Source of the DNA: Ramazzottius varieornatus
Lineage: Eukaryota > Animalia > Tardigrada
Reading direction: 5' to 3'
Length of the DNA stretch: 64,000 nucleotides
Assembly: GCA_001949185.1 (NCBI GenBank)
Contig: BDGG01000005.1
Span: 2,407,249-2,471,248, forward strand
The notes under the pieces were generated by a model, which searched no databases, was not told the DNA's origin, and worked only from the letters and a program-made list of their open reading frames with translations. Position 1 is the first letter of the stretch. Every line of letters begins with the position of its first letter. Below are positions 1-63,900 of the stretch, piece by piece. Made by a program: the position numbers and the translations under genes.

Positions 1-2147
1 CCCGTTCGAAGCGAGCCGACAAGTGCCCAAGGGAGGTCAACCATTTGTGGATGTTGCTGCATTGCAACGATGAAAATAACGCAAAGTCTTTTGCCCAGCA
101 GCTGGCCCAAAACGGGCGACCCATGGGCCTCATTATGACCGATGCTCCCGTCAAGATGTAAACTTACATTCCTTTCGTTTTCGCGCTGAAGCAGAACACT
201 AACCGTATCTTGACTTTCAGAGTCAACACGGTGAACGACAGTCCAACGGCATTTGTGGAGGCAGCCAGAAAGCACTACAATCCAGCCTGTGCGCTGGTAG
301 TTGCAATGTAAGTAGTTTCACCTCCGGGTCCACTCTCTCTTCCTTTTTACATGTAACCTCGCGATCCTTTAGCCTTCATGCATGGAGAAAGCCTCTTTCC
401 GGTTTTTGCAGACTTCCCAGCAACTCGAGCGATCGCTACAACGCGTTTAAAGAGTTCTTCTGCTGCACCGCGCCTTGTAAGTTTGGGCAATTGATGTCTC
501 AGAAATTTTGCAAATGCCGATTCCGGTGATCGTTTCTGATCCTTCGGGTTGTACTCTGCAGGTCCTTCGCAAGTAGTGGTGGCCAAGACCATCAGCGACC
601 AGAAGAAGGTTCGAAGTGTTGCTACCAAAGTTTGCATGCAGATATTGGCAAAACTTGGCGGTGAGAACTGGAAGATGAAGGTGAGTCCAGGTCTCCGAAA
701 TACGTTGAATGTAAAACTGCTTTGGTCGTGCTCACTCGTTTTTATTTGTCGTAGTTTCCCTTCAGTGTCCCGACGATGGTCATTGGGGTGGACTCGCATC
801 GCGACAAGACCGAACGAAACACTGTGGTGGCCGTGAGCGCTACTCACAATGCTGGCTTCTCTGGGTACTTCAGTTTCACTGAATATGCAAAGGACGACGA
901 CGCGGTTTATGGCACCGTGACTCGCCTTGTTAAAAGTACGCTCCTTAGTTTGGTTTTTCTGATTTTTCCTTTGAACATTGAAGTTGAATATTGCGGGCAG
1001 AGCATATTTGGGACGTTATGAAATAAATTCACCCATTTAATTTTCGTAAGTGGCGCACGTTTTCGATCAGTAGTATCAAAAACATGCGCCACTTGAGAAC
1101 GAACTGCGCGAAACCATTCGCCGACGTCTCATGTTTCTGAATTTGATCCGACTAGGTATTTTAAGCTCTGGTCTTTGGGAAATTCACTGTATGTAAATTT
1201 CAAAACACTTTGGCTACTAACGAGTTTGCTGTGCAGAAGCCGTGGAGGCTTTCAAGAAGCGTAACAACGTCGTCCCCGTCAACATCTTCATTTACCGGGA
1301 CGGTAAGTGTTGGCCTGTCTTTTCTATCCCTATCGCGGTGAAACGTAACTCAAGTATGTCTTTTTCTTAACAGGTATCAGCCAAGGACAACTTGATTACG
1401 TCCGTGAAGAAGAGCTGAAGGGCATCAAGACGGTCTTGGGCGACTTTGCTACGGATACCAAAGGCACTCTCCCCAGGCTAACTTACATCCTCGTCAACAA
1501 GCGCGATTCCTCTCGGTTCTTCGAAGCTGGCAACAACCCTTGCTCGGGGACCGTCATCGACAAAGTGGTCACTCGTCCATTCCGGTAAGCATGCATTTTT
1601 CCAACCATCTTTCGGAGCCCGGCAAATAGACAGCCTGATCGTTTCCCAAGTCGCACATGCCAGCAGCTACAGTAATATCACTGTACACGTGCCCCAGTTG
1701 GAAAACGATCTACTGTACTATAGTTTGCTCGGTGGCATCCCAGGATTTTCAGTTTCCTTGCTTTTCATATCTTCGCTCATTCATGGTGTCTTTTTCTTAT
1801 TTAGTTACGACTTTTTCATCGTGTCGCAGTCAGTTCGCGAGGGCACCGTGGCTCCTACCTACTACGACGTCATTTCCGACCAGGTGAAACTGCAACCGGA
1901 CGCGATGCAGCAGATGACATACATGTTGTGCCACATGTACTTCAACTGGCCGGTATGCCATTTTACTGTTTATTTTATAGGTGAAATCGAGCTTTTTATG
2001 ACGCTTTATTCGAATTGGGTTTTTTGTCAGGGAACCATTCGAGCTCCCGCACCTTGCCAGTACGCGCGCAAGCATGCTCAGTTGGTCGCTCTGAGCATCC
2101 ACGCTAAGGCCAAGGAACAACTAGAGGACAAGCTATTCTTCTTGTGA
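1..2147 (+). CDS. PIWI-clade Argonaute, MID-PIWI portion (5' part outside window), multi-exon
   Basis: Spliced exons give SQVVVAKT..SVATKVCMQILAKLGG, MVIGVD, IFIYRDG, VNKR..RFF, NPCSGTVID, YDFFIVSQSVREGTVAPTYY and [23 protein letters not shown]...DKLFFL*, all typical PIWI motifs. GT-AG introns; stop at 2147. Confidence 0.95.
1048..1094. repeat. Intronic N27 palindrome unit (PIWI intron)
   Basis: AAGTGGCGCA-27nt-TGCGCCACTT. Confidence 0.9.
1648..1699. repeat. Degenerate palindrome unit (PIWI intron)
   Basis: GATCGTTTCCCAAGTCGCACA-32nt-TGCCCCAGTTGGAAAACGATC. Confidence 0.7.
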
Positions 2148-2579
2148 GGATCCTCCATGGATCAACAACGACACTGTGACAAGCGAGCACCTTTGTTATT
2201 GTTTTCTAGAGATTTATAAACCCTTGTTTTTCGCTATCAAAGCTTTTACAGAGAGCTCATTCAAGATTTATTAGAATCTACTTTTCAGACACTAACCTTT
2301 GATGGATCGCAGCCTTCTGTTTTACCAAGAATCAAACTGTTCGGAGTCTTTTTACTCACGGATTATTCAACGCGTTTTAGATTTTTACGGGAACCTTTCA
2401 AAGTTCTCTGATTGATACCACGATGCTTCTGTTCAATGAAAAACGAATATCCAACAAAAAAAACCAACTTGAAACAGCCAGCCATGTAGGGGAAAGGATT
2501 GTAGGAAACTGAAGAACAACACCAAGGAGGAATTTGCCTGAATTACAGTACAATAGTTCGCAGTTTCGCAGACCAAAAC

Positions 2580-3871: not shown

Positions 3872-4954
3872 TCAGTTGAAGGACAAGAGCTCGACGTCGA
3901 AGATGAGCACAGAGTTGGGCGGGATCAGGCCTGGATATCCTTTGGCGCCGTACGCATAGTCTACGAAAGAAAAGCGTTTTTATCAACACTCTCTGCAGTA
4001 ACTTACAGTACAGTGAATGAGTTTCAGAAAGGTATAACGAATGCAGGTACCTGGGCTGCAGGTGAGTTTGGCTCTCTGACCCAAAGACATTTGAGCTACT
4101 CCTTCGTCCCATCCTGCAAAATACAATACGGATGATACCGGAACGTGGCCAAACGAATCCTCACCGATTTTAACATGAGAAGTGAACAAGTGAAAATGAA
4201 TAAATACCTCGTATCACTTGGCCTTCTCCAAGCTTGAACGAAAATGGCTGTCCGCGATCCCGTGAAGAATCGAATTTCTTTCCATCAGTAAGAGTGCCTC
4301 AAAGGATAAAAAATCCCTAATTAAGTACAGTATACCACTCCACTGAAATTGATCCCAGAAGTAGTTCCGGAAGTCTATAAAATGTACGGACAGCCGGCAC
4401 TATCTGGGAGCTCGGCCAGGGAACTTGACAGAATCGTTTCATCAAGTGGCGCACACTTTTAGCCAATAACACTGGTAACGCGCGACACTCGGGAGAACGA
4501 TCATGTCCAGCCTTTTCCCAGCAGGAAAGCCTTTGCAGCCCGAGCTGGGTTAATCACTGAATCAAACGCTGAGAGCCATTGACCGACGATGCTTACCGGT
4601 GTAGTGGACGTTCACTGTTTGGCCGTTTTTCGGGAAATTCTTACCTGCAAACAAAGGGAACAATGAAAATGCTTGCAATTTTAAGGCATTTTCCGTTGAA
4701 ACCCCGAACAAAATATCTCATCTCATCAGACAAATGCCTCGTTTTCGTCCGCACCGACTCGAGGTCTTGGACTCGTCATCTTTCTTCGTCATCACGCACC
4801 ACATACACGTCGTCAAAAGGCTCCATGCAAAGAAAACCCAGGCTTCGAGCAACTTACCATCTCCGGGCCTGATAGTTTCAATCTCGACTCCCATGGCTGA
4901 TGATCCTTGAATCCAGATGCAAGCGAGCAGCAAAACGACAGGTAAGAAATGCAT
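3872..4954 (-). CDS. FKBP12-type peptidyl-prolyl isomerase (copy A, 5 coding exons, possible signal peptide)
   Basis: Exons assemble to [108 protein letters not shown]. In-frame upstream [20 protein letters not shown]. Confidence 0.93.
4444..4490. repeat. Intronic N27 palindrome unit (FKBP-A intron)
   Basis: AAGTGGCGCA-27nt-CGCGACACTC. Confidence 0.85.
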
Positions 4955-8143: not shown

Positions 8144-9344
8144 ATGACCACCGAAGCCTCCAACGGGCAGGTGCCGACCGTCAAGAAAAAGCGGGGACCC
8201 AAGAAGAAGGTCTGGTCTCCGCAGGTACGTGCTCAACGTCAGATGGTGAGGAGGAACCGCGCCAACGCGAGGGAGAGGTCGAGGATGCATGGATTGAACC
8301 GCTCTTTGGAGATGCTGCGCAGCGCGTGCCCCATGTTTGCTAATCAGAGATTAAGCAAAATCGACATCCTGCGATTTGCCCGGAATTACATCAAAACTTT
8401 GTCGGAGATCTTGCAGACGGGACAAACACCGGATATCCTGGATTATGCGAGGGCGTTGACCAAGGACCTGTCACAGGGAACGATTAACCTTATCGCCGGA
8501 CACCTTCAGGTACGAACGTAAAGCATTTCATTTAAACTAGTTTCTTCATGAGTAAGTGATATTAGCGCAATTTCTTCTGTAACACAAAGAGTAATAGACG
8601 AAAGAATTGAAATTGAACCCTGGGCAAACAAAACGTAGTGATCGTCGTTTCAAGTGGCCCATCTTTCAATTGTAAGGGCAGTAATCCTGCGCCTCTTGAA
8701 TGATCTGGTACGGTATGGTTGTCCAGCTCGCTCTCGCACTTCTCAAATACTCTGGCGCTGATACAGATGACTTAGATGAGTCAGTTCATAAAGTTTGAAG
8801 TATAACGAAGTAACAATAAAAAAAGGACGAACGATTTCGACGTTTGGGGCACGATACTTCTCCCGTATCAGAGTTTGCCCTTGAATCTCTCACAGATTCA
8901 ATCAGTAGACATTGTCTAAAGTATACGTACTCGTAACTGTTTCCTTAAATAAAACAGGTTTCTCCGCACCTGCTATGGTACCCGGACACAGTCCTCATCC
9001 CCGATCACTTCCTGTACGACTTCCCTCACGAACCGCCGGGGGTTTCTCGGCATTTACCTCTGTCTTTTCTACCTGCGAAAGTTCAAGAACCGATCAGCAA
9101 CATCCACAACCAAGAAAGCTTCTCCGGTTATCCGCAGGAAACGTTGACTTACCATCGGTCTTCCGGGTCCGCCGACAGCGACCAGTACTTGCCTGCGCGT
9201 TTTCCTCCAGGCCACCCAGTGCCCCAATCGGAACGTGCAGAAAGCACCGTCGTAAGGTATCCAGTCCAAGAAGTCCTGGACCATCGGATCAGCCCCAGTG
9301 GATTTCCCGGACATTTGTGGATGTCAGCGAATTTTCAAAGTTAA
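8144..9344 (+). CDS. NeuroD: NeuroD-family bHLH transcription factor (2 exons: 8144-8509, 8958-9344)
   Basis: KKRGPKKK basic stretch, RRNRANARERSRMHGLN...LSKIDILRFARNYI, and the NeuroD-specific LTKDLSQGTINLIAGHLQ. A phase-0 GT-AG intron keeps the frame to the stop at 9344. Confidence 0.9.
8652..8697. repeat. Palindrome unit (NeuroD intron)
   Basis: AAGTGGCCCA-26nt-TGCGCCTCTT. Confidence 0.75.
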
Positions 9345-9899: not shown

Positions 9900-12258
9900 C
9901 TACCTAGCGAAGACTAGTGGTTCATCATCGTCAATGCTACTTCGACCATACCGATCGTAGTCTGATTCGTACACCGTTCTTGATCGCTTCCGTAGGTAGA
10001 GGAAGAGTCCAGCTGTGATCAAAGTCTACGAAAACATCAACAATGACGCACAATGGACCGAAAGACTGTTATCATTTCAGAGAGTCAAAGTACACACTCA
10101 CCACCACAATCTGCATGATTGCAAAGCCTGTCAACGTCCACTCGAAGCCGTATCCATCGGAGAGTGCACCGCCGATTGTCGGTCCCAGAAACGCCCTACG
10201 AATTTTGAATTTCGTACAATCCGATGTTAAAGAAACGTTTCAGCTTCCAAGGGAGAATAACAATCGGTTTCTCCAAGGTGTCCGAAAGCGGCATACGAAA
10301 TTGACCAGATCACTTTCCCGAGTGACACCCGCTTCTAGCCAATTTCGCTATAAACGTGCGTCACTTGAGTAAACGATCTGGTCGTGTTTGTCAAGTGGCG
10401 CACGCGTCCAATGGAAATCTCAATGACCGTGCGCCACTTCCGAGCCGATCTGGCCGAGTTTGCTTTCTTACCCTAAAGAAATGGCGGAATTCAGGCTTCC
10501 AGAGACCATTCCGTATGTATCGATAGTTTCTGGAAAGCCCTTTTCACTAAGAAGAAAGCACATAAGTGACGTTTCTGTTCATTCTAAAGTCTACACACCC
10601 AAGAAAATAAAGTTGCGCGGACTTACATGGCGGTCTTGAGGTTCTTGCCGAATGGTGGAATGAGCTGTAAACCCACACCGAGGCCCATGAAGATGTTCCC
10701 GATGATATTCACCCACAGCATATCATGCAGTCGAGCAGGGAAGATGGGCGAAGGACCCATCAGGAGATATCCCACGACTGTAAACAACCCACCAAGTAGT
10801 ATACATTCCCACGCTCGTCCGAACCTATCCAGGAAAAAGCCTAGCAAAGGCGAGGAGAATAAGTACACCGCCGTCGGAATGAGGAAAACCAAACTCAGAA
10901 GTGTAAAGTTCGAAAGGAGCTGCAACGGATAAAGACGCTTTGAGGACTTTGAGGGTGCAGAATGGTAAAAAGTACTTACGTGTTTTAGGTGAGCTGAATA
11001 AGTGGCGTCGATGAAGCCAAGTCCGAACGTAATAGTGAACACGGACAGAAGTGTGCAGAGGATCGCGGGAATCTTGATGTATGTTCGGAATGTACCGTAG
11101 TCTCTTCCCCTGGTTGTCTTATTGACTGGAAGAGTGTACAAAGCGACAAGACCCACTAACATGACGCAGGTTCCCAAGAAGACTAACGGAGCTTTGAAGC
11201 CACCAGCCTCGTATAGACCCGACCCAATGATCGGACCCACCATGAAACCCAGCCCGCTGAAGGTTTCACAAGTCCCGAACATTGTAGATATGGAGGTGGG
11301 AAATACGTCGGCGATGATCGTGAAACTCGCTGGAACGAGGTACAAGGCGGCTGAGTTTCTGGCGAACAACCTTGCAACGTATGGAAGCGCGACAAAAGAT
11401 TCAGCAAGATCACGTTCCAGAAGTGGCGCATACTCTCGCTGTTACTAGCTTGGAGCGTGCGCCACTTGGACAAACAGCCTTGTCGCTTATCAGAAAATCC
11501 GACATAACGAGTGCATGACCTCACGGTTTAGGTCAAGCACTGTATTACTGCAGCGTGATCACAGCATGACGTAACGAACAGGTTGATACGTCAATTAGGG
11601 CACTTTACCTGTGACAACGGCAGACGCTCCGAGCCCTTGCATTATCCGAATCAGGTAGCACATGGAGATGAACGCAGGATCCGGAGAATATTCCAGGACT
11701 CCCATGAAGACAGTTGCCGCTCCGGCGACGCCGATCCCGGAAATGTACATGAACTTGGTTCCAATGTTATGGATCTGCTAACACGAATACAGGTCAGTTC
11801 AACACACCAAGGTAGATTGATTCTTGATTCTAATGTACCGTTAGTCCCCAAACAAACGAAAACACAAACATGACCAGCTGCATGATTCCGAAGACCAGCC
11901 CCACATCGCCACTTGATGCGCCTTTCGAGGCGGCCTGTAATGAAAACACATGCGACACTGACGTAGGTACGAAGGAAAAGACATCGAATCACTTACGAAC
12001 GAAGGAAAAAACACGGCGATGCAGGCATAGAACGTCGAAGTGAAGAAGTTGCCCTGGAACAAAGGGACCACATTACTCCCATCGCCGGCTTCAAACTTGA
12101 ATCTTGATATTTCTTCACGATACAGAAAAGCTACAAACCAAGCAGAGAGTTGCAAGAATTATCTTCCTGTCTCTTGGAATGGAGAGGAAGGTATCGTATC
12201 GCCGCGGACGCCCTGCTGGCGACACTACCGCACCTCCGAGCTCATCCACTTCCGTCAT
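9900..12258 (-). CDS. MFS transporter, SLC18B1-like, multi-exon
   Basis: Many hydrophobic helices, ETFSGLGFMVGPIIGSGLYEAGGFKAP and YLLMGPSP motifs. The last exon ends ...SIDDDEPLVFAR*. Confidence 0.85.
10320..10439. repeat. Two tandem N27 palindrome units (MFS intron)
   Basis: Units at 10320-10366 and 10393-10439, both with 27-nt spacers. Confidence 0.9.
11421..11467. repeat. N27 palindrome unit (MFS intron)
   Basis: Perfect arms, 27-nt spacer. Confidence 0.9.
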
Positions 12259-12391
12259 GGTCACCGCTGTTCTCCATCCATATGATCCAAGCACATGCAC
12301 ACGCTTCGAAGCGGGAAACGAAAGCAAGATCTAATCTAACTTTACCAAGAAGAAAACCGAAGACAGTACAAAATTAATAAAAATTCGGAGT

Positions 12392-13122: not shown

Positions 13123-15631
13123 GTGTTCGGGCGACGGACGTCTCTGGAAGCTGAGCTTCGTCGACATGAAGAAGAAGACGCCGAGCGGGAGCGAGACAGG
13201 GCTGAGTTGTACGGAGAAGAAGATGTTCAAGCACCATCACCTGCTGCGTCTTCGATCTCCACAGCTCCCAACACGACTTCGAAGAAGCGGAAAGCTGCCG
13301 AGGACATTGAGCGGCGAGCGCCTGTTTTTCAACACTGGACCCATGATGCCGTGAGGAAGAAGAGCTGCTGTAAGTACTGTAAGAAGGAATACGCTGACAG
13401 TAACTCAAACACTCCCCTGTCGAAACATAAGAAGAAGGCTCATCTTAACGTGCTGGAAGGCAAAAGTGCGAAGGAACGAGTTCCAGACCGGTGTCGTAAG
13501 ATGGACAGGGAAGCAGGCTGCGGAGTTCCAACAATAAGCAAGAAAGCCAAGAGAGAAAAAGACGACAAGCTGACGCGCCTAATCGTGAAGTGCTCTTTAC
13601 CATTCTCGATGGTCGATTACAAAGAATTTGTCGAATTTGTTAAGGCTCTGAACCCTTCGTATGTTGTACCGTCCAGAAACACTCTGAAGTCTTGGCTGAT
13701 CGATGACTTCGAAAAATACAAGGAAGGCACCTTCATTTTCCCAAGCGGCGCAGGCTCCGTGATGATAGTATGTGAAAAGCGCGCCACGTGAAAAGAAGCT
13801 TGACAGAATTGTTTTTCCAAGTGGCGCACGTTATGGTTGCCATTGATTGGAATGTTGTGTCACTCAGTATAATGATCTTTAAATATTTGTTCGCCCAACT
13901 CCCGCATATTGGTAAATTTTTTACGGTCCGAACCAGTAGCTGAATTCAGAAAAATCTGATCACGATTGTTTTGTTTCTGTAGCTAAAGAAGAAGCGGCAG
14001 AAACACCTAGAAGGATATCCCTCACCATGGATCCATGGACGTCACTAGCGCAAGAAGGATACATGGCTATCGCAGCACACTGGGTGACCAACGAGTTTGA
14101 GCTGCGCCGAGTCCTGCTTGACTTTGTCGATCTGCCTGCCGAACATAGCGCCGAGAATCTGAAGAACTGTTCTGACAGTCTTGTGAGATTACGACATTGC
14201 TCATAAGACTCTAGGCTACATAATGGACGGTGCAGCGAATATGACAGCCTACTTTAAAGGCATCCTGCTTGAACTACGAATGGAGAGAGAAAACCGCGGT
14301 GTGAAAAACGACGGAAACTTTCTATCTTTATGATTACTTGGTATCATCTCTGTAGGAGATAACATACGTTGACGTTGGGTTTTTCTGCTAACACTTTCCG
14401 AATCCAAAGTACGATGTATTTGTCATGTTATGAATACAGTGTGTCAGGTTGGCGTGGTAGTTGAGAAGAACTTGATCGGTCGAGTATGCGAGTTGATCAA
14501 AGTCGTGAAAAGACCAAAACCCAAAAGAATCTTCCGAAGTCTGCTCACTGACGACAAAAAGAAGAAGCTCGGCCTGCCGCTGGACTGTTCGACCCGTTGG
14601 AAGCACGTTACACATGGTGGAAAGAGCCTTTGAGATGCGCCACGATTTTAAAAAGTACTTCACTCTGCACGACAGCATGGACATGAAGAAAACTCGTCTA
14701 CTGGAGAAGGAATGAGACGAGATGAGGGAACTGGTTGAGCTCCTGACGCCTATGCAGCAGATTACGGTCGACTGCTCTGCTGCAGCAGAACCAACATTTC
14801 ATGTCGGAAAGTTTCGTCTGACACGTCTGGCTCTTCACCTTAGACAAAGCCAAGAACTTCCAACGGCGGCAGGTTTCGTAAATCTGGTTGCTTTAGGTTA
14901 TGTTGATTTTCCCTTTATTCGGTAGTATCCACTTTTGTAGTTTTTCCTTGATTTATTTACAGGCCGATATTCTGAGAAAGACTGCAGAAGCCATGGAGGA
15001 CAAGATGACGCATATCAGTCAGATGACGCATAAGACGTGGTTAATGTTGGGCAGCTTTTGGATCCTTGCATCAAGCGAAGCCTGGTACCAGACACGGTGG
15101 GCAAGCTTGCGGCATCGGATCTGTTAAAGAAGTTCTGTGCGTTCTACAAAACCGAAAGTGACCAAATTCCGAAGTCGACAGCAGTTACTTCCGTGTCCAC
15201 CAGCACCATCCGAAGGGTGTTCCTCGAACTGCTGAACAAGAATGCGAGTGCTGACTAAAGCGAAGCGGGACAAATATCTAGGCAATATTCTTGGTTCATC
15301 AATGGTACAATAATTGCCTTACAGTCTGCGCGCTAAATAGGATCTGTTTTTCAACCCAGGTACGGCGCCGGAATTGGATTGCAAGCCATTGCAGTGGTGG
15401 AAAGAACGTCGAGAGATATTTTCAACTTTGTGCAAAGTAGTGATGAATATTTTAGCTGTCTGTGATTCTTCGTCTGAGTCCGTGCACTGGTTTTCTCAAA
15501 GTGGTAGAGTAATCCCGAAGTCGCGATGTAGTCTTGGTACTAATTCTGTCCAGGTTTCCATGTATTTGAAGTCTTGGCATGGTCACGTCTGTCTTGCTGA
15601 ATCCGAAGCTTTTGATCTTACTAATACTTGA
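13123..15631 (+). pseudogene. Disrupted, intron-containing hAT transposase
   Basis: BED finger (CKYC...H...H), LPFSMVD..F..FVKALNPSYVVPSR, ISLTMDPWTS...MAIAAHW, LDCSTRW and dimerisation domain PLQWWK...SSSES..FSQSG. Broken by stops and frameshifts (e.g. TGA near 14714, TAA near 15256). Start approximate. Confidence 0.9.
13743..13865. repeat. Two tandem N27 palindrome units (hAT transposase intron)
   Basis: Units at 13743-13789 and 13819-13865. Confidence 0.85.
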
Positions 15632-16724: not shown

Positions 16725-17353
16725 GCTTGAATGCATATGCGCGATACACTACGAGCGAGGCTGCGCTTCGTGCGCGGTACCGAACTGGAGTATTACAGAG
16801 ATGAAGTTGGCACCCCGGTACACTTTGCAACTGTTGCTATGGCCTTGCTGCGCCCCTTTCGTGACGTGTAACTAGATTTTGCTTTCCGGAGTTCCCCTTA
16901 TTTTCGGAAACTAGCGTAATCGAGGTTACGGTTGGCTGGCATTGAGAAGCATGGTGGCTCCCCAATTATTCAAAGATCTGATCAGTTGCTTCGCTTATCA
17001 GTGACGTTGCAACTCATCTTACCTACAGTCGGACTCTTTCCCGGCGGTGGCAACTTAATGTGTGTATTGACTTCCGAAGTTCCGATTCTCAAGTCGCAGC
17101 GCCTTACGTCAGCTGCGACAGGGAAAAACGGCGCGAAATGTCTGTGCGTTTCATCCAGCGCATGACGTATTTGACGCCTTGGGTTGTTCCGATTTTTGAA
17201 AACTGATCTGTATTTTTCTTAGCTCTGTGAATGACTGTGATCAGCGGTGGATCGTGGACGGGTGATTTACTCAGCCTAATATGGGCAGTGGGCAGAGTAG
17301 ATCAGTAAGGCGGAGCTAGTTTGAGAAGTAAGGAGTGGGAACGAAAAGAAAAT

Positions 17354-18026: not shown

Positions 18027-18036
18027 CACTGCTCAT

Positions 18037-18562: not shown

Positions 18563-19854
18563 CTGCACATATCCACAATCACGGAACTGTCACTTACGAC
18601 CTAGGGAAACTTTGTTATCAGTGCGCAATTCTATCTTTTGAACAGGAGACCCGGTGTTCGAATAACATTCGGAACGGCGTTTCTCATACAAAAAGGTATT
18701 GATTGACTGATTTCCGTTCCAAAGTTGGGCTGCACTTGCTGTTACGCAGCCGTTCTGTCTTCGGATAATTCACTGAGTAAATCACCCTTCCATCGCCGAC
18801 TGTGATCTTCCTCTGAAGTGAAGCTCTCACTCTTTGCTTCTATCGGATCTTGATCGCCACATTTCCGGCCATGGACCTGTAAGCCCTGAACCTCGAGGAG
18901 GCTGCTTCGTCGAATGCAGCGGAGGTAAGACTTGGAGAAAACACTTTCACCGATCTGTATGGTTCCAGACGGATGCTGAAAAAGCGGGAATGGTTTGCGC
19001 TGGTCCTAGCTGTCTCCTTCCTTTCAAACCAACTGATGCCAAGGAAATCAGCTTCCACCGTTTTCCCACTGGTCTTCTTGGCAGCTTATGGCTTCATACA
19101 TGTGGGATGAAAGATACCCTCGGTATAGTCGACCACGTTTACATCTGCAGTACTCAGTTCCAAGCCACTGACTTTGAACCGGCCGCCAAGAACAAACAGT
19201 CTGAAACACGGCTTTTACATACAGCGCTTCCTTCATGTGTCTTCGACGGAAGTGGACAGCGAATACAGCCGACGAAATACGGAGGCGACGAGCAAGTGCA
19301 CGAGGTAGAGCAGATGGACGACGCTTCCGCTGAGGTAAAGATATTTCTCGAATCAAACTACTTTATCGAAAGATATTTGCACGGTTGATTATTGCCGTAG
19401 GTGGAACCTGCCAGTACAGAAGAGGTACCTTTAAAGTGCGCCGTCGCAAACTGTCCGCATATTCGTGGAGATCCAGGCTCGCTCCACATCAGCCTCTACC
19501 CTTTTCCACGGGGCATGTAGGCCAAGGTCTGGCTGGTCAAGTGTGGAATGGACATGGATACTGGGCATGCTCATATCTGCAGTGCTCATTTTAAATTGAT
19601 AGATTTTCATCCCGACACCATGGGGAACAAAACCACGAGACAATTGCTAGAATCAGCCATTTATTCCATCGGGTCGGTTCCTTTCGCTGCATCTATAATT
19701 TAGTTCTCTCCGACACTGATCGCGTACCAACTGAAGTAGTAGTCACCTCTACGAGCGCGATGGAGCAAGAAGCGAACGATGGCTCTTTGGTGAATGTAAG
19801 CAACCAACGAAGACTGGGAGCTCGGCGAACGAACTCAGCAAGACTGTTTCTTCC

Positions 19855-19901
19855 AGGTGCCGCATGCTTTCGCCCAGCAACACCGGGGACGTGCGCCACT
19901 T
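19855..19901. repeat. N27 palindrome unit (THAP pseudogene intron)
   Basis: AGGTGCCGCA-27nt-TGCGCCACTT. Confidence 0.85.
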
Positions 19902-20647
19902 GTGAACTTGACGAAATCGCTCTTCCAAGTAGAATTCCGCAAGACTGTCAGAATGGTATCTTCTTGTTTTCTTCCTGTGATGTTTGAGCGGTGCATTATT
20001 GTTTCTTTTTTCTAACATCAACTCAAGAGCAAGAAGCAGGGAAAGCCCACAAAGAGCACCAGAAGTGACTGCGCAGTGTCGATGTGCCGTTACTACCACG
20101 GGAAGCCCGGCTGTGAAGAGGTCTCCTTCCACAGGTATCCAACAGGTGTGGATCAAGGCTTACAGAAGATATGAGGAGATCGGCAAGAGCGAGCGCATGT
20201 GTAGTGGCCACTTCTGCCTTCCCACAGACTTCCACTTTTCTGGAGCTGGACTGGTGAAACGGATTAACGAGACGGCACCGCCTTCGCGCTTTGACTGTCT
20301 TCCCCCCAAGACTCCGGCTTGCGTATGCGAAGTCAGCTCCGAGGAAAGACCTGGCTGCTGGAGAGTTCGGGAAGCCCATCCCAAAGAGGCTGGAACCGAC
20401 GAAGTTCTCGCTGAAGCACTTGACGCAGAAAGCGATAAACGATGTGGACAGTCTTCGAGAGTCGTTGAGCGATGCTGGGAAGAAGATGCATCGGGCGAGC
20501 AGTAAAATAGCGGACCAGGAAAGGGAGATCAACCTTTTGAAATCTCACTCGACGCTATCACGTCGACCAAGGTGAAAAACTAGAATTTCCCAGAATATAA
20601 TGGCTGATTGGGAGCTCGGCAAACAAAGTCGACAAAATTAGTTTCCC

Positions 20648-20776
20648 AAGTGGCGCATGCTCTCCGTATTATTGGCTGTAACCGTGCGCCACTTGTATAA
20701 ACTCTCTTATCGAGTTTGGCCGTCTTCCCAAGTCGCGCACGTCTTCAGTGTTATTAACTGAACGTGTGAGCCACTT
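20648..20776. repeat. Two tandem N27 palindrome units
   Basis: Units at 20648-20694 and 20730-20776. Confidence 0.9.
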
Positions 20777-21303
20777 GGAAGAATGATCTCGCCCAGTTCG
20801 TCTGCCGAGGGTCCAGAATATATTATTTATATCACTTCTTTAAATGTTCTTTTTGTTCCTACAGCGTAAGTTGGATGGCATTCTGGGGATGGATCGCCTG
20901 ACCGCCGAAGCAAGAAGGATTCATGAACTGGGCGAGTCGTCATCAAGAGAATTCAAAGTGATGGGCAACTCTCTAAACCTACAGCTCTAGATACTTACCT
21001 CAAAGAGTTTTCTGTGCCCACAATGTTAGAATTGACGAGCCCACAGTGTTAGAATTCATTGACAAATTAGTCACCGAGAGCCGAATGCGACGGTACTGAT
21101 GATCATTATTACGTCGGTGAGCGACTTGACTTCGGTTCACTCGGAGCTCTCCCATAAGTCCTTTCCCACTTTTTATCAATGTCCAAACAAACCATTCTGT
21201 GGTTAAGCCATCGATAAAACATAAAAAATCAAACAGCGATATCACAGTAACACTGAAGGCACGAGTCAATCTTAAAGAAAAAGAATTCGCCAGAGTATTC
21301 CCG

Positions 21304-35400: not shown

Positions 35401-35470
35401 AGTGGTTATCAAACCTAAAAGCCTACAGTAAATGGGACGTGGCCAAACGGAATCGCCCAAATCCTTCCCC

Positions 35471-35517
35471 AAGTGGCGCACGCTACCAGCCAGTAACAAC
35501 TGAGTCGTGCGCTACTT
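35471..35517. repeat. N27 palindrome unit (probable 5' UTR intron of THAP gene)
   Basis: AAGTGGCGCA-27nt-TGCGCTACTT; minus-strand acceptor at about 35415. Confidence 0.88.
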
Positions 35518-36021
35518 AGAATAACGATTTGGGTGAAATCACTTGTCGATCTCCCAGATTAGAAAGATATTCTGAACAATGGTATAATACGAGCCGCTTT
35601 TCTTATATGAAGAAAGGATTCCGGACCGGCGGTGGCAAAGTTGGCTGAAAGAACAACACAGCCACTTGCAATGCACAAATGCTTAAAAGTTGTACAATCT
35701 GTTGTCACTAAATATCGAGGATTTCGTCCTTGGATAGACTAATTTTCCTCAGAAAGGCTTAGAGGCTGAGCGCAATGAAACCGTCGTCCGGACTGCTTCC
35801 AAAAGAATAGACCGCCCATTCAGGTAGCCCTGGCGGATCGAGACATTGGGCAGATTGAGCCTGAAGACCTGCCGCCTTTATATCGCTGTTTACGTTGGCG
35901 TCGGTATGCATCTCCAAGAATGTCAAAAGAAACCCTATTATCGAAGTAGCCCGTAAAGTGATTCTTTGAAACCTACCAGTATTTTATTGGCGAGGATTAA
36001 GAGAATGAGATTAATTGTCTC

Positions 36022-36068
36022 GACTGCCGCACGTCTTGATTGTTATCGGCTTGAAGCGTGCGCCGCTT
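36022..36068. repeat. N27 palindrome unit upstream of UBC exon
   Basis: GACTGCCGCA-27nt-TGCGCCGCTT. Confidence 0.75.
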
Positions 36069-36204
36069 AAGATAACCATCCCTCTACGTTCTGTTTGTCG
36101 GCCTCCCAACACCAACAATGTCCGAAAGAAAATATTCAGACTTTTCAACGCTAAATTATGTAATCAAATGCTTGTGTTCCTTCCGCCTCCGGTCGAGACC
36201 AGCA

Positions 36205-52411: not shown

Positions 52412-52540
52412 AGCGTTTTTGGCTTCGTGTGTGAGAAAAGTGTGGATGTTGCAGAGCAACACTTCAAGCTTCCTGCGGAGGCATAAAATTGTGGGCGAGA
52501 CCTCTGGCTTTCATCTGAGATCAGTCAGCTGCACGATGAA

Positions 52541-55500: not shown

Positions 55501-58500
55501 ACAGCGCATGAAGATGCGTACAAGGACATGGAGACCGCTGTAACCACCGCTATTGCTGAACTGAGGACTGCAGACCTGGCGGGCATCAACCAGAAACTAA
55601 ATGATAGGCTCACGGGAGTAAAGGATACTTTGGCTGTCATTGAGAAGGGACTCTTGAACGCCAGCCGGCAAGCACAGATTGATCAACTCAAAAAGCGAGC
55701 ACAGGTACTGCATGTTGGAGCTCGGCATGCAAGCAAACTAGACAGGGTTCTTTTCCAAGTTGCGCACGCTCTCGGTACTATCGACCGAAAGCGTGCACCG
55801 CTTGGAAAAGCTCGTTCGCCGAGCTCTCATAGGCGTCGTCGACATAAATTGTTTCGTCTGTCTGATATGAAATTTTACAGAACGAAAACGAACGTTTTAT
55901 GGAAACCGTGAAGACCATGCTATCACAGTTCCGGACGAAATATCCGGTCAAACTTCAGGCTTTACAGCAAAAAGTTCGTGAGATGTTAGCTTCGATCAAG
56001 GTAGGCATTCCACCGTGTAGTTGTGTATAAAAACATTCAGTCCTTCCTCCATCCGGCATCTTGTTGCCGTACAGATTATGAAATTTCGGTCTGTTTGAAG
56101 GGTAGATGTTTCAAGACGGAGGAAATTACAGTCCAGATGAGGCCAAGAAATTCGAGCAACTCTTCGGTAAGCTGATCGAGAAAACCGCGCAAGGAGAGAA
56201 GTCCTTCGGAACAGAGTGTCAACAGATCGAACTGAAGCGCAAGACGGCGGTCGACATGCTGGTCAACAAGAGTATGGAAAAGGTGCCGGCCCACGAAACG
56301 GACGTGGAAGCCGTCAGAGTCCTCACCGGTATCCTAGCCAGAGCTCAGGCCGAGATAAAGAAGCATGCTGCGTTGGTCAACACCGAATATGCAGATGTAA
56401 AAGGAAAGATGAACTACTTGAGGGGCGTACTCGCCGCGTTGAGACGGAACGTGACAACGGCTGAAATCGATGCGGATAACGTGCTGTTGAAGCTAACGGG
56501 GCTCCTTCAAGAGGTACGTGGGGCAAATCTGTCTTGGTATTCCAAACAGAGCTCCATAGCGCACTGGGAAAAAAAGAGGGGGGGGGGGTTGTGATTTATA
56601 TTTGGAAAGGCTCGGAGATGCAGAACTTCATATTGATACAAATGCTCGTAGAAAACAGGGCGTAGCCTTGACACCTCCATCACCGCAAGCGCCGTGTTAG
56701 TTCGAACAGGAAGGCGGCGTGTTACCGCAGTTATGAATTTATGACTTTCAGTCAAACCGAGCCGTGAAAATTTTGCTGATTTCATTACGAGGCACTGGCC
56801 CTCGAGTGGACACGGCAGATTTCGACATCGGTACAAAGAGAACTGCGCGCAGTGAAGCACGGTCTGTCGTGCTGTATTTAGTGATCAAGCCAAGTGATCG
56901 TAGTCAATCAATGTGACAACACGACGGCCAAGGGTCCACAGCAATGTCTAATCTGGAGATGTCTACTGCAGGGCCAGTGCCTCGTATCGTTTGCGCCCAC
57001 TTTTTTTCGTGTTACGAGTTCATGGTCTGTAGACGAGAGCATGCTGCGGTCAACTGGGCTGTATCGGCTCAACCTGGCCTGTTCCAGCGACTTCCTCCGT
57101 CCCAGAAACGCCAAAGTCTCCAACCGCAGCTCCTCGGAACATCGCTTCCGCCCAGTCAGCGCGAAGCGCCAAAGGCGCAAACCCACCACAACTGCCGCCC
57201 ACCGAACCTGCACTTGTTCGACAACCCACAGTTACTTCTTTTTTGCTCGGCAGTACACGCCGGTCGAAGATCGGCGCTCCCTTGAAGGCCCATCCGCCTG
57301 TGCCAACCGACTTCCAGCTGTCGACGTCCGACGGACCTGTTCCCTTAGTCCAACCGCGCATTCCAGTCCCAATGGACGGTCGACCGATCACTTCGTCCGC
57401 GCCAAAGACTGCACCATCTTCAGCAGTAGGTCTTAAAGGTAACGACTCACTGACAGAAAAGAAAGGAGCGAAGAGCCTGGAGAAGTACAACGTCTTCGGT
57501 GATACAGTCCTTCCTGGTGCAAGGACGTTTTTGGAGAGGGTCCATGTAGTGTGTTGGCAAGTATTGGACGAGAGTTTAACAGCTTCCAAAGCGTACCATC
57601 AAGCAAGAGGCACGAGACCGGTGACGAGACCGAATTTGATACCGAATTCACTGGAGGAAACGGTGGAAAGGCTCTGTAGGAAATTGCTGAACTACCTGAC
57701 TCAGTCGGAAGAGTTTGCGGCGCTCATGGCTGACCGGTACCGGGAGATGGCCAGCGGCTTGATGGACCTGATTGTTGACTTGGCACCGCTGATATTCCGG
57801 CATTTGCTGGGCAGGTTTTTTCAAGAACTAGTTTTAAAATCGAAGTTGATCAAGGACAAGTACGGCGACGACTGCAGGAGAATCTCCGATGCACGACAGG
57901 TGAAAACTGATTCATTCGGCGGTTCCCTTTTGAACAGTACTGTAGTATTTCCTATGATGTGGTCGATCACCGGTACCGGTCGGCCGATCAGGGCGAGGGG
58001 TGAATTCGCCACATCCCCTATGGCTATTTCACACAGTATGGACCAAACTGGTCTTTACCATAGAGGGCATTTTTGCAGGATATCGATGATCTGGGCATTC
58101 CAATTCAGCTCATCCGACAGAACGATATTCAAGAACTCCTAAAGTTTTTCGTGGCTTCTAACAAAGCTGATTGGTTAAATGAGCTACAGACCTTATCGGA
58201 AGACTTTCTTCGCAAGCTAAAGTCGGCCATCGAAAAGCTATTTGAAGCAGCGGACCTGTTGATTACATCCGAGGAGCTTCAAACACCAGTGGCGCCCCCT
58301 ACGTTGACCATTTGCGCGCAGTCACGACGGAGCGTGGTGTCTCCTGTCGACGATCCACGACGAAGTACGGTTGGGCAAACCTGGAAAGCTTTCGATATTA
58401 GCGGTATTGTGGAGCAACCGGACGAAACTCTATGTTTTTGCGATATTTCCTGCGAGAAGACTACCTTGGCTCACTTGGCGGTGGACGACGCAAGACACAG

Positions 58501-58669: not shown

Positions 58670-58748
58670 AAATATACATGGCATCAATATTACAAAAGTC
58701 CTCATTGAATAAATGGTTGGTTCGGAGGATCGTAGGGGCGAAGAACAA

Positions 58749-60969: not shown

Positions 60970-63900
60970 ATGTTGAGTTCAATGGCCTCATCAGTTCGCG
61001 GGTCCACCGCTTACTTGGATCGTGTCCACTCTAAAGACGAACTCCAAGCCCTGAATACACGGCTCGCCAAATATATCGACAAGATTCGGAATCTGGAGAA
61101 CGAGAATGTCGCCTTGCAGGTGAGCAGTAGTCGGGACCCAGGCAAACAAGCTCAAAGGAGCCGTTCTTACAAGTGGCGCACGCTTGCAGCCTATAGCACT
61201 TTGAACGTGCGCCACTTGAGAAAACGATCATGTCGTGCAGGCTTGCGTTTTTTAAACCTCCGAAAACTTCAACTCAAAAATGTGAGAAGAAATATTCGCG
61301 CGAATCAGTACTCTTTCACCGGGCTGCGTTTGGTAGATCTCAGCACAATCCAATCATTAAGTTGTTTCCCGGTACCAACATGCAAAGTTTCATTCATTTC
61401 GGGCAAACGTCTTTTTGAAATGTTGAAGTTCTTTTATAGCGCCAGCTGAATACCGCGGAGCAGCACACCGTTACCGAAGTCCATCGCGTGTCAAAGTCTT
61501 ACGACGAGGAGCTCGTCAAGCTTCGTAAGCAGTTGGAAGATGTACTGCGAGACAATGCTCGGTTGCAAATGGAGCGGAACAGTATGGAAAATGAGAATAA
61601 GCAGTATCAGCAGCGGTAAGTCGATTACCGACCCTTTGTTCGATAGGCTTTGAAAGCTCATTAGAAAGGACGGTCCGCCGTAGTGCAGTGAAAGCAGAAA
61701 TGCTTGGCCAACGCAAGTGTGTTTTTCTTGCACTCGTCCAAGAAAGGAAATTCAGTAAGCGCGCTGGTCAAGCGTGACGAAAAATACTATGCTTGACCAC
61801 AAAACGCTGCGAGGCCTGCAAAAAAGTAGTGCGCTGTCTCGCCAAAGTGTAACAATGAGAGATCAGTATTTTGTTTTTGCTCGTCAACCGTCCTCGGCGA
61901 CGGTGAAGAAGAGAGATGAGAGCAGAAAAAAACCGTGAAACTGGTTCTGTGTTTAATCAAGCGGAATGCGAGACATCTCAAAGAGATCTTCAAGTTGACC
62001 ACAGAACGCATACAGTGTCGCCATGAAGGAATTTAGTTCCGCGTTCTTGGCCTCTGCTCAAAATTAGCACTTTACTTAAATCTAACTCCATGGCTTAACT
62101 TGCCGAGGTTCCCACCAAGATTGTGAAAACCTGTCAACTTCTGAACAGGACCAGCATTTCCATAGATAAGATTTGGTCTAATCGTACAGCCACTTTCCAT
62201 TCGGGACAAATGATGGCCCACCTAATGTGTACCCCGTCGCCTTTGTCCAGTCAAACGCAAAACCAATGGAGAGGTGATCAAGGATGTAGTTCGTTGATCG
62301 AGTTATTTTTTATGATCCTGTATAACCTTGCTATGTAAACTGATTTTTCACAATGTTTGGTTCCATTCCGAAGGCAAAACAGGTTCCACAAATTAATCGC
62401 ACTACGCTGTGTTTTCTTTTCTAGAAGAACTTATTCCTTCAAATAACAGCGGCACGTAGGAACCAGGCAAAAAAGCAACCCTACGCAATACTACTGTGTT
62501 TCAAGACAGAACTGTAATATCTTGAAAACTGGCGAATATCCTCTTTGTCTTGCATTTTTTATGTACCGTAATTTTGGGTAATCCTTGAGGTCGTAACTCG
62601 TCCAAAGCGTTAAAGCGATCATGCCACATTGCTGAAAATAGGAAGGACTAATCTAGGTTCCCGAAATCCCTTGATGTACCTGCGTCTTGTACCGGGAGAA
62701 ATTCATCGTACGTCGTGGTGTGAGTCTCCACATTCCCCCCCCCCCACTTTCACTGCGCAGAACCGCCTCCACTGTGTGTATAACGTTTTTCCATATTTGC
62801 TTATTATGAGGGCATTATCCTTGCAGTCAGTCGCAGCTGGAGAAGCAGGTGCAGAACCTGGAGGCCAAGCTACGGCAAGCGGAAGACTTGATTGCCGATT
62901 TGCAGCATCGTTTATCGCAGTCGTTAGATGCTCGTCAACAACTGGAGAGTGACATTAAGGTACGACCGGTCTAACCACAAAAAGGTTGAAAGTCAAAACC
63001 CTGACCATAAAACGTGCAATAATCATATGACTATTTTCGCAGGATTTAAAGACACAGATCAATACGCTGAAGACCCAGTTCAACACGCTGCAGCATGATT
63101 ACGACAACGAGCGCGTTCGCACTGCCGACTTGGAAAACAAGTTACAGACCAAGGAGGAGGAATATGAATTCGAGAAAAATGCGTTACATGAGGTGAGACC
63201 TTACCTTCACCTTGAGAAAAATTATGATCGATGTACCACGCTTCATTGATCCCCGCGGAATCTAATTATGATCTGCCGAAGTATGCTAATCCGTATTTGA
63301 GACGTGCGCAAGTAAACCAAATGGCTTTCCGAAGTGGCGCACACTCTGCTAACAACGATGCGATCGTCATCTCAGGTGGCGCATTTTGACGTTGTCACTA
63401 TTAGAGAGTGTGCGCCACTTGTACTAACGATTTGGTTCAGTGCATTTGCCCAGGTCTGCTTTAGAAGTCACCGATCAAAACTATGAGACAAATTGAAATG
63501 ATTTCCATGCAATGCTCAAAACTTTAGAGTCTGCGGGAGGAGAAATCTCAACGACAGTATTTGATGAACGATCTGCAACGAGGTCTTCAAGATGAGTTCG
63601 AGTCCAAGCTGGTCCAACAGCTCCAAGAACTCCGTAACGAGTACGAGGACATGATCAAGAATGTCCGAGCGGAAGTTGAAGGCAAGTCTGATGATCGTAT
63701 CCGAGCCCTGATGCAACTGTCGGACCAACACACCGACACCATCACGCGGCTGCAGAACGAGATCGACGAGTGGCGAACCCGTTCGACCCAGACACAGGCC
63801 GATCTTGACCGACTCCGCAAAGAGGTTTGTCCTTCAGTCTGGATTACAGTATAAACTGAGCTTAGTAGGAAACGTTGGATGATTTCGCAGAATGCTGACC

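What the first reader, a model, noticed from the sequence alone, without database searches (positions are those of the whole stretch)
1048..63420. Dispersed family of fixed-spacing palindromes: AAGTGGCGCA-N27-TGCGCCACTT
Seen: 29 units at 22 loci (first arm at 1048, 1648, 4444, 8652, 10320, 10393, 11421, 13743, 13819, 19855, 20648, 20730, 21680, 21755, 23779, 24974, 25056, 25943, 27765, 29822, 33225, 33303, 33375, 34130, 35471, 36022, 55757, 61171, 63374). The spacer is exactly 27 nt in 24 of them; the others are 26, 26, 28, 29 and 32. Spacer sequences are strongly diverged and share only a loose consensus near CGCTTCCAGCCAATAACACTGAAAACG, found in either orientation. The arms are much better conserved and extend outward roughly as GATCGTTTTyCC-AAGTGGCGCACG. 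Inference: neutral decay of a MITE should erode arms and spacer alike. Conserved half-sites at a fixed 37-bp offset (about 3.5 helical turns) around a drifting middle suggest a bipartite binding site for a dimeric DNA-binding protein (transposase-derived or architectural) or a selected structural element. I do not recognise it as a described family.
Basis: partly seen in the sequence, partly recalled or inferred. Interest (0 to 1): 0.9.

Follow-up and report, generated by a model that had tools for sequence, protein, structure and literature searches.

The report
Old tardigrade MITE with slow-decaying boxes
The fixed-spacing palindromes are the middle of a roughly 125-bp palindromic mini-transposon that is already in a published tardigrade repeat library, but its two inverted 10-12-bp inner boxes have decayed about three times more slowly than the rest of the element in some 13,000 copies, which suggests that a protein still reads them.

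Summary
The genome (55.8 Mb, 200 contigs; by size and the library match, Ramazzottius varieornatus) holds 1,416 perfect arm pairs, against 0 for the control.

The arms are not a free-standing element. They are the inner part of a 123-125-bp near-perfect palindrome with 4-bp target-site duplications (A-N-A-T). It is published as ramVar1-7 (DNA/Sola) and ramVar1-23 in Peona et al. 2024, so "not a described family" is wrong.

Arm identity is 0.87-0.89, against about 0.70 for flanks, 0.60 for the spacer and 0.54-0.70 for the outer termini. Divergence is 2.2-3.6 times lower in every base class, CpG included.

- The family is star-like, a single old burst, so this slow-down came after insertion.
- It is uniform (one binomial, p about 0.89) and independent between the two arms of a unit.
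- There is no covariation and no strand-coherent G:U pattern.
- Spacer length (78% at 27 nt) is only moderately more stable than the flank (57.5%).

Best reading: former transposase-binding boxes still under weak constraint as protein sites, each acting on its own. Earlier agents of this scan saw the same family on other DNA.

The parts
1010..1130 (.). MITE copy (reader unit 1048), monomer
   Evidence: nhmmer profile hit; perfect arm pair
1614..1717 (.). MITE copy (unit 1648), degenerate arms, 32-nt spacer
4405..4516 (.). MITE copy (unit 4444), perfect left terminus and left arm
8620..8729 (.). MITE copy (unit 8652), 26-nt spacer, flank of the ramVar1-7 type
10289..10467 (.). Tandem dimer (units 10320, 10393), arm-start period 73
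11382..11486 (.). MITE copy (unit 11421), beside an MFS_1 exon
13731..13903 (.). Tandem dimer (units 13743, 13819), period 76
19815..19913 (.). MITE copy (unit 19855)
20609..20814 (.). Tandem dimer (units 20648, 20730), period 82. Both outer termini are present and the junction forms a second small hairpin.
21647..21839 (.). Tandem dimer (units 21680, 21755), period 75
23749..23856 (.). MITE copy (unit 23779) in a short intron of a minus-strand gene
24944..25124 (.). Tandem dimer (units 24974, 25056), period 82. It fills most of the roughly 225-nt gap between two minus-strand exon ORFs (FYVE exon at 24213-24953).
25905..26027 (.). MITE copy (unit 25943), near full length
27732..27833 (.). MITE copy (unit 27765)
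29783..29904 (.). MITE copy (unit 29822), full length
33182..33459 (.). Tandem trimer (units 33225, 33303, 33375), periods 78 and 72
34095..34198 (.). MITE copy (unit 34130), 29-nt spacer
35433..35556 (.). MITE copy (unit 35471), full length. Its best full-length relative anywhere in the genome is 74% identical.
36014..36108 (.). MITE copy (unit 36022), degenerate
55716..55829 (.). MITE copy (unit 55757) inside an ordinary intron (donor at 55705, acceptor at 55880) of a DUF4455/DUF4456 gene
61133..61246 (.). MITE copy (unit 61171), perfect arm pair
63311..63456 (.). Fragment with a solo arm (63332) followed by a MITE copy (unit 63374)

Best explanation
The units are copies of an ancient, very abundant, non-autonomous DNA transposon (a MITE). 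I estimate about 13,600 units in the genome. The element is 123-125 bp long and is an almost perfect palindrome:
- an outer terminus (GGGAGCTCGGC)
- a 27-nt flank
- a 27-nt centre that is itself a 9-bp stem plus a 9-nt loop
- then the mirror image of the first three parts.

It inserted with 4-bp target-site duplications, preferring A-N-A-T. In this window it sits mostly inside short introns. The family spread in essentially one old burst and then died: its terminal cleavage sequences have since decayed like neutral DNA. The two inner boxes lie 39 bp inside each end and were most probably the transposase-binding sites of the active element (inferred). Since insertion they have changed about three times more slowly than the rest, uniformly in all copies and independently of each other.

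The mechanism I commit to is that each box is still recognised as double-stranded DNA by a sequence-specific protein, either a retained or domesticated transposase DNA-binding domain or a host factor. Weak purifying selection, or a binding-dependent repair bias, then slows its decay. The 27-nt spacing is largely an inherited feature of the founder rather than a requirement.

Shown: the anatomy, the TSD, identity with the published family, the star-like history, and the size and uniformity of the slow-down. Inferred: that a protein binds, and which one.
For: **Identity.** My consensus matches ramVar1-23, and with subfamily differences ramVar1-7 (DNA/Sola; 123 bp, 4-bp TSD, 56-bp TIR), in the supplement of Peona et al. 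2024.

**TSD.** Only k=4 stands out: per-base match 0.52 against about 0.30 for other lengths, with exact AAAT, ATAT and ACAT pairs.

**Slow-down without ascertainment:**
- Thirty copies chosen on the left half only have a right arm at 0.8-0.95 identity, against 0.4-0.7 elsewhere.
- With an arm-blind profile, arms are at 0.87, flanks at 0.69-0.70 and the spacer at 0.60.
- Comparing each copy's left half with its own right half, one-sided changes are 21.6% in arms and 36.6% in flanks, Fisher p = 3e-12.
- It holds in every base class: arm AT 0.137, CpG 0.087, GC 0.126, against 0.282, 0.325 and 0.299 elsewhere.
- With terminus-blind detection, the termini are at 0.54-0.62.
- Genome counts: 9,740 perfect arms against 428 perfect termini; 1,416 perfect arm pairs against 4 perfect terminus pairs.
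- Jukes-Cantor distance ratios are 2.2-3.6.

**Post-insertion.** Pairwise identity of half-elements is 0.5479, against 0.5476 after column permutation. The nearest relatives genome-wide are 74-81% identical.

**Uniform and independent.** Arm mismatch counts fit one binomial. The ratio N1/N0 = 2.40 gives p = 0.893, and the conditional counts give 0.881-0.884.
Against: - No binding protein and no autonomous partner were found.
- The conservation profile across the box is rather flat (0.83-0.93). It lacks the peaks and troughs typical of many transcription-factor motifs.
- A uniform, partial slow-down of about 27,000 boxes needs very many weakly selected sites. A sequence-specific mutation or repair peculiarity cannot be excluded from one genome alone.
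- The motif has no match as a known binding site in the searched literature.
That does not favour a simple symmetric dimer.
- One earlier agent of this scan judged the copies to evolve like surrounding intron DNA.
Confidence: 0.5

Rival explanations
1. Selection at the transposon level only. The boxes are transposase-binding sites that were kept in the lineages of elements that went on transposing. Flanks and spacer drifted between many master copies. After insertion nothing is constrained.
For: Internal transposase-binding sites are usual in DNA transposons (general knowledge). The published library holds several consensus variants with the same boxes but different flanks: ramVar1-0, -6, -7, -16, -23 and -26. 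About 60% of positions changed on both halves are changed symmetrically, so some variation predates insertion. A few columns have alternative alleles at 0.36-0.52.
Against: The family is star-like: half-element pairwise identity is 0.5479, against 0.5476 permuted. There are no close relatives genome-wide. The outer termini, which any cut-and-paste transposase needs, have decayed to 0.54-0.70. Arm conservation is the same whether or not the adjacent terminus is perfect, 0.28 against 0.29. Most flank changes are one-sided, so they arose after the palindrome existed.
Confidence: 0.15
2. Structural selection. The GC-rich boxes are the nucleating stem of a hairpin, either in intronic pre-mRNA (hiding the insertion so that short introns still splice) or as a DNA cruciform. 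What is kept is the pairing, not the sequence.
For: The whole element is a palindrome, and in this window the copies sit in short introns that they largely fill. The conservation profile is flat and equal on both boxes. In the 11 units of one minus-strand gene, arm transitions are 8 to 1 in the G:U-compatible direction on the sense strand, p = 0.04.
Against: Compensated changes in the boxes number 7, against roughly 3-4 expected. That proportion (0.64 of double changes) is no higher than in the unconstrained flanks (0.60). Transitions within a unit are not strand-coherent: 0.449 concordant against 0.50 expected, from 173 transitions. The 9-bp stem between box and loop and the 27-bp flank stems are not protected. 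There is no Rfam match.
Confidence: 0.15
3. An ordinary, neutrally decaying MITE. The apparent protection of the boxes comes from ascertainment, alignment or subfamily mixing, or from a locally low mutation rate.
For: One earlier follow-up in this scan reached this verdict. Only one genome was available, so mutation rate and selection cannot be separated directly.
Against: Four designs that do not select on the arms all show the effect (and the counts in 51, 52, 58). So does the self-comparison within each copy, which needs no consensus. The GC-rich, non-repetitive termini and the CpGs outside the boxes are not protected.
Confidence: 0.1
4. Concerted evolution. A nuclease or transposase that recognises the boxes keeps triggering short-tract gene conversion from other copies, which resets mutated boxes to the family consensus.
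For: It would give a flat, uniform slow-down centred on the boxes with shoulders one or two bases wide, as observed, without any benefit to the host.
Against: No active or domesticated enzyme was found. Conversion tracts are normally much longer than 12 bp and would also homogenise the neighbouring spacer and flank, which are among the most diverged parts. This is inference only and was not tested directly.
Confidence: 0.1

Closest known systems
ramVar1-7 (DNA/Sola) and ramVar1-23 (DNA), with ramVar1-0, -6, -16 and -26, in the curated Ramazzottius varieornatus repeat library of Peona et al. 2024, Mob DNA 15:10 (PMC11071193)
   Same: The termini, flanks, boxes and length (123-125 bp) are the same. 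The table lists a 4-bp TSD and 'TIR: whole / 56 bp', which agrees with my own consensus and TSD.
   Different: Nothing differs in the element itself. Searches of the paper's main text and held supplements turned up only catalogue entries for it; I saw no mention there of unequal decay of the inner boxes. For most variants the TSD is given as 'Unclear' and no superfamily is assigned.
Sola superfamily of DNA transposons (4-bp TSD)
   Same: A 4-bp target-site duplication. The published curators assigned one variant to Sola.
   Different: No Sola transposase or autonomous element with matching ends was found or could be searched for here. The assignment rests on TSD length alone. Other superfamilies also make 4-bp TSDs (from my own knowledge).
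MADE1/Hsmar1 MITEs and the SETMAR protein in primates (from my own knowledge, not checked here)
   Same: Thousands of dead MITE copies carry the binding site of a transposase DNA-binding domain that the host has kept. This is the kind of system my best explanation proposes.
   Different: In that case the site lies within the terminal inverted repeat and the protein is known. Here the site is 39 bp inside the ends, the termini have decayed, and no protein is known.
Internal (subterminal) transposase-binding sites, as in P elements or the IR/DR type of Tc1-like elements (from my own knowledge)
   Same: The recognition site lies tens of bp inside the cleaved terminus, once per end and in inverted orientation.
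   Different: Those sites are described in active elements. Continued protection in long-dead copies is not part of that picture.
Transcription-factor sites spread by MITEs or SINEs (for example the plant MITE study PMC5950925 listed, which I did not read)
   Same: One short motif is multiplied genome-wide by a small transposon.
   Different: Those studies show that motifs were amplified. I know of no uniform post-insertion slow-down of the motif across all copies being reported there, and I have not checked.
Introner elements (intron-creating transposons)
   Same: Small TIR elements with TSDs that make up most of many short introns.
   Different: In the intervals examined, plausible splice sites could be read at four (around 23749, 24944, 25905 and 55716), and they lie outside the element. 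So the element does not supply the splice sites here.

Membership tests
MITE (non-autonomous class II transposon) | Terminal inverted repeats | tested here: met
   The whole element is a palindrome; the left-half consensus is complementary to the right half at 61 of 62 positions.
MITE (non-autonomous class II transposon) | Target-site duplication of fixed length | tested here: met
   4 bp: per-base match 0.52 against about 0.30 for other lengths; 6 exact pairs out of 35 old copies; A-N-A-T preference.
MITE (non-autonomous class II transposon) | Short, non-coding, high copy number | tested here: met
   123-125 bp. 9,740 perfect boxes in the genome and about 13,600 units estimated.
MITE (non-autonomous class II transposon) | A related autonomous element with the same ends | not tested
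None is in the curated table. The one long library consensus that carries the element is a hAT family with a nested copy.
Published family ramVar1-7 / ramVar1-23 | Sequence identity of the consensus | tested here: met
   The library strings shown have the same termini, flanks and boxes as my consensus.
Sola superfamily | 4-bp TSD | tested here: met
   the published table agrees.
Sola superfamily | Mobilised by a Sola-clade DDE transposase with matching TIRs | not testable with these tools
   I know of no Sola profile in the available libraries and had no reference protein. No transposase domain was found among the 20 long ORFs of the window that I scanned.
   0.87-0.89 against 0.54-0.70.
   Left and right mismatch counts are uncorrelated (rho -0.18). 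P(arm | partner arm) is 0.291, against P(arm | terminus) at 0.280.
   78.3% of perfect pairs are at 27 nt, against 57.5% for the 27-nt flank, p = 1.4e-6. The flank has about twice as many homopolymer runs of 3 or more, and 22% of perfect pairs have another spacing.
Structured RNA or selected hairpin | Compensatory changes and G:U-tolerant substitutions | tested here: not met
   There is no excess over the flanks. Strand coherence is 0.449 against 0.50 expected. Rfam gives 0 matches in the window.
Introner element | The element or its TSD provides the splice sites | tested here: not met
   Where donors and acceptors could be read (units 23749, 24944, 25905, 55716), they lie outside the element. 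This is inferred from the sequence; no RNA reads were available.

The most novel reading that the evidence does not exclude
About 27,000 copies of one 10-12-bp box, delivered by a single ancient MITE burst and sitting mainly in introns, are still bound by a tardigrade protein (a domesticated transposase or an architectural factor) and are kept by weak selection. That would make the MITE the carrier of a genome-wide protein-binding network in a very compact animal genome.
Probability: 0.3. Interest if true: 0.75.

Novelty: new member of a known kind. Interest (0 to 1): 0.45.

Why it matters
As a repeat family this is catalogued and ordinary, so the claim of an undescribed class of element should be dropped. 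What is left is a clean, quantitative anomaly. In a long-dead transposon whose cutting ends have decayed like neutral DNA, one short internal motif has resisted change about threefold, equally in some 13,000 copies. If a protein is responsible, the most abundant repeat of this genome would be a map of its binding sites. That is directly testable with DAP-seq, a pull-down or footprinting. It would also be a rare case outside mammals and plants in which sites delivered by a transposon are demonstrably kept after insertion. If a mutation or repair bias is responsible instead, it would be an unusual sequence-specific one. The result also settles a disagreement between earlier follow-ups of this scan: the 'evolves like intron DNA' verdict does not hold for the boxes.

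Tried and rejected
- I used shorter patterns instead.
- **Random genome sample.** All sample statistics therefore rest on the window plus 62 loci (255 kb) and on count-only genome searches.
- **RNA evidence.** The intron calls are inferences from ORFs, Pfam hits and splice motifs.
- **Chance or artefact.** Rejected by the shuffles and the reversed-pattern controls.
- **Known RNA family.** No Rfam match in the window.
- **Known binding motif in the literature.** The only hits were primers and unrelated sequences.
- **Relatives in metagenomes.** Eight contigs hold the exact arm pair. None shares the flanks or the spacer. Seven are GC-rich and look bacterial, and one is a different palindrome, so they are chance matches.
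- **Fixed 37/74-bp lattice.** In tandem units the arm-start period varies from 72 to 82.
- **Introner.** Rejected.
- **CTCF, E2F, NRF1 and THAP-like motifs.** I considered these resemblances from memory only. None was good enough to state, and no motif library was available.
- **Autonomous partner in the published library.** The long consensus that carries the element is a hAT family with a nested copy.

Full report

Yes. The exact pattern AAGTGGCGCA-N(20-35)-TGCGCCACTT occurs 5 times in the window and never in 100 shuffles. Single arms with at most one mismatch occur 47 times, against 3.9 expected. Allowing two mismatches per arm gives 22 real pairs, 18 of them with a 27-nt spacer.

Printing all 29 reader coordinates at a fixed 27-nt offset shows the remaining, more degenerate partners. 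A profile built from the family finds all 29 units and one extra fragment at 63311-63347.

The assembly gap at 17354-18026 lies between units that end at 13903 and start at 19815. No unit touches it, so continuity across it does not bear on the finding. ORFs listed across the gap are artefacts of the N run.

**2. What the units are**

The window belongs to a 55.8-Mb assembly of 200 contigs. Its size, and the exact match to a published repeat library (below), point to the tardigrade Ramazzottius varieornatus.

Alignment with wider flanks shows that the 10-nt arms are only the inner part of a 123-125-bp near-perfect palindrome. Its layout is:
- outer terminus GGGAGCTCGGC (columns 2-12)
- a 27-nt flank ending in GATCGTTTTCCC
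- the box (columns 40-49)
- a 27-nt centre that is itself a 9-bp stem plus a 9-nt loop (CCAATAACA, the only asymmetric part, hence 'either orientation')
- then the mirror image.

The left-half consensus is complementary to the right half at 61 of 62 positions.

Copies with recognisable ends carry 4-bp target-site duplications with an A-N-A-T preference. Only k=4 stands out, with a per-base match of 0.52 against about 0.30 for other lengths, and exact AAAT, ATAT and ACAT pairs. This explains the frequent T before and A after the element.

Some loci hold two or three units in tandem between one pair of termini. The arm-start period there is 72-82 nt, so it is not fixed. The junction is itself a small hairpin made of the flank.

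**3. It is already catalogued**

The supplement of Peona et al. 2024 (Mob DNA 15:10, PMC11071193) lists ramVar1-7 as DNA/Sola, 123 bp, 4-bp TSD, 56-bp TIR. It lists ramVar1-23 as DNA, 125 bp, 'TIR whole', TSD unclear. Both have the same termini, flanks and boxes. Four more top-ranked families (ramVar1-0, -6, -16, -26; 113-125 bp, 'whole') have the same description.

The box 10-mer occurs 58 times in that library file. My term searches of the main text and held supplements found only catalogue entries for the family, and I saw nothing there about unequal conservation.

No autonomous Sola element is in the part of the curated table that I read. The one long consensus that carries the element is a hAT family with a nested copy. 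The Sola label therefore appears to rest on TSD length, which I confirm. I could not test for a Sola transposase.

**4. Are the boxes really better conserved?**

(a) I took thirty loci chosen for a perfect left terminus plus left box. Their right box is 0.8-0.95 identical per column. Spacer, right flank and right terminus are at 0.4-0.7.

(b) I scrambled the box columns of the profile before searching. In 74 copies that were not the reason a locus was fetched, the results were as follows.

| Segment | Identity to consensus |
|---|---|
| Boxes | 0.87 |
| Flanks | 0.69-0.70 |
| Spacer | 0.60 |

The flank value is biased upwards, because the flanks drove the detection.

(c) I compared each copy's left half with the reverse complement of its own right half. 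This needs no consensus and is blind to symmetric subfamily differences. One-sided changes affect 21.6% of box pairs and 36.6% of flank pairs, p = 3e-12.

(d) Divergence by base class shows that neither composition nor CpG decay explains the effect.

| Base class | Inside boxes | Elsewhere |
|---|---|---|
| A/T | 0.137 | 0.282 |
| CpG | 0.087 | 0.325 |
| Other G/C | 0.126 | 0.299 |

(e) The outer termini are GC-rich and non-repetitive, so they are the fairest comparator. Measured with terminus-blind detection they are only 0.54-0.62 identical, against a background of 0.39.

(f) Alignment-free genome counts point the same way.

| Count in the whole genome | Number |
|---|---|
| Perfect boxes (control 114) | 9,740 |
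| Perfect termini (control 2) | 428 |
| Perfect box pairs | 1,416 |
| Perfect terminus pairs | 4 |
| Perfect terminus plus adjacent box | 120 |

These counts give a per-site identity of 0.88 for boxes and 0.67-0.70 for termini. Jukes-Cantor distance ratios are 2.2 (self-comparison), 3.0 (sample) and 3.6 (genome counts). The protected block is columns 40-49 at 0.83-0.93, with shoulders at columns 39 and 50.

**5. When did the difference arise?**

The family is star-like. Pairwise identity of unbiased half-elements over non-box columns is 0.5479, against 0.5476 after permuting columns. Per-copy divergence is only slightly more variable than binomial.

A well-preserved copy has no relative above 81% anywhere in the genome. 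A typical window copy has none above 74% over its full length.

Box, flank and spacer divergences are uncorrelated across copies. P(box perfect | adjacent terminus perfect) is 0.280, which equals P(box perfect | partner box perfect) at 0.291. So there are no younger and older classes.

A few columns carry alternative alleles at 0.36-0.52, and about 60% of double changes are symmetric. Some subfamily variation therefore predates insertion, but it is a small part of the whole.

Hence most change is private and arose after insertion, and the boxes' slow-down arose after insertion too. Selection acting only on actively transposing lineages cannot explain it, all the more since the cleavage termini have decayed like neutral DNA.

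**6. What kind of constraint?**

It is uniform. Mismatch counts per box fit a single binomial with p = 0.117 (observed 38/45/23/8/2, expected 34/45/27/9.5/2).

Genome-wide, pairs with at most one mismatch at 27 nt number 3,766, against 1,109 perfect pairs. That gives p = 0.893, the same as from the conditional counts. From this I estimate about 10,700 units at 27 nt and about 13,600 in all.

It is independent between the two boxes of a unit (rho -0.18).

It is not a pairing constraint. Compensated changes number 7, against about 3-4 expected, and their proportion is no higher than in the flanks. Transitions within a unit are not strand-coherent, as they should be if G:U-compatible changes were tolerated in a transcript (0.449 against 0.50).

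One small observation runs the other way and remains unexplained. In the 11 units of the minus-strand gene at 19.8-30 kb, box transitions are 8 to 1 in the G:U-compatible sense direction, p = 0.04.

Spacing is only moderately conserved. 78.3% of perfect pairs have exactly 27 nt, against 57.5% for the equally long flank, p = 1.4e-6. The flank contains about twice as many homopolymer runs, and a fifth of perfect pairs have another spacing. I therefore regard the fixed spacer as mostly inherited.

**7. Context**

The window carries ordinary animal genes: RRM, MFS, FYVE, UBC, Sushi, C-type lectin, PAS and DUF4455/4456. No transposase turned up among the 20 long ORFs that I scanned.

Units lie in the gaps between exon-sized ORFs and fill most of these short introns. 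Where splice sites could be read, plausible donors and acceptors lie outside the element. Examples are the dimer at 24944-25124, and unit 55716-55829 with a donor at 55705 and an acceptor at 55880. Both orientations occur within one gene. These intron calls are inferences, because RNA reads could not be obtained.

There is no Rfam match. No paper uses the motif as a binding site. The eight metagenome contigs with the exact pair share neither flanks nor spacer with the family.

**8. Verdict**

The boxes behave like kept recognition sites. However, the thing is a described MITE, the two boxes are not coupled, the spacing is mostly inheritance, and a structural role is not supported.

My best explanation (confidence about 0.5) is that these are former transposase-binding boxes still read by a protein and weakly constrained, each on its own. 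The rivals are:
- selection at the transposon level only (0.15)
- an RNA or DNA hairpin (0.15)
- neutral decay with an artefact or a low local mutation rate (0.1)
- box-centred gene conversion (0.1).

Earlier follow-ups of this scan on other windows saw the same family. Three reported a 3-5-fold slow-down, a 4-bp TSD and 12-13 thousand copies, which my independent tests reproduce. One called the decay uniform, which my tests contradict for the boxes.

Noticed in passing
window 20609-20814, 24944-25124, 33182-33459 and other tandem loci: Two or three units share one pair of outer termini. The junction between units is about 12 nt of right flank joined to about 23 nt of left flank, and it forms a second small hairpin. 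The whole dimer is therefore a larger palindrome, as if made by fold-back copying. The period is 72-82 nt, not fixed.
   Followed up: partly
window 19815-29904 (11 units in a minus-strand gene): Transitions inside the boxes are 8 to 1 in the direction that would keep G:U pairing in the sense transcript (p = 0.04). The sample-wide test for strand coherence is negative.
   Followed up: partly
window 54640-55908: A 423-codon open frame reads straight through the MITE copy at 55716-55829. Splice-like sites at 55705 (donor) and 55880 (acceptor) indicate an ordinary 176-nt intron, so the open frame is coincidental.
   Followed up: yes
window 24905-25130: A short intron of about 225 nt consists mostly (about 80%) of a MITE dimer. 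Several neighbouring gaps between exon-sized ORFs of the same stretch are likewise mostly MITE.
   Followed up: partly
published library, consensus ramVar4-518 (DNA/hAT): This 490-bp hAT non-autonomous consensus contains one nested copy of the palindromic MITE with both boxes perfect. That copy was therefore carried along when the hAT family spread.
   Followed up: no
L065:38-173 (contig JAAUYB010018826.1): A different long palindrome in a 47%-GC metagenome contig has the same 10-nt boxes 26 nt apart but unrelated flanks and spacer. It is probably chance, because in a palindrome only one 10-mer has to match.
   Followed up: partly
whole sample: CpG positions outside the boxes have not decayed noticeably faster than other G/C positions (0.325 against 0.299). 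This suggests little or no CpG methylation-driven mutation in this genome.
   Followed up: no
window 17276-18382: Several long 'ORFs' listed across the assembly gap (17354-18026) are artefacts of translating the N run.
   Followed up: yes
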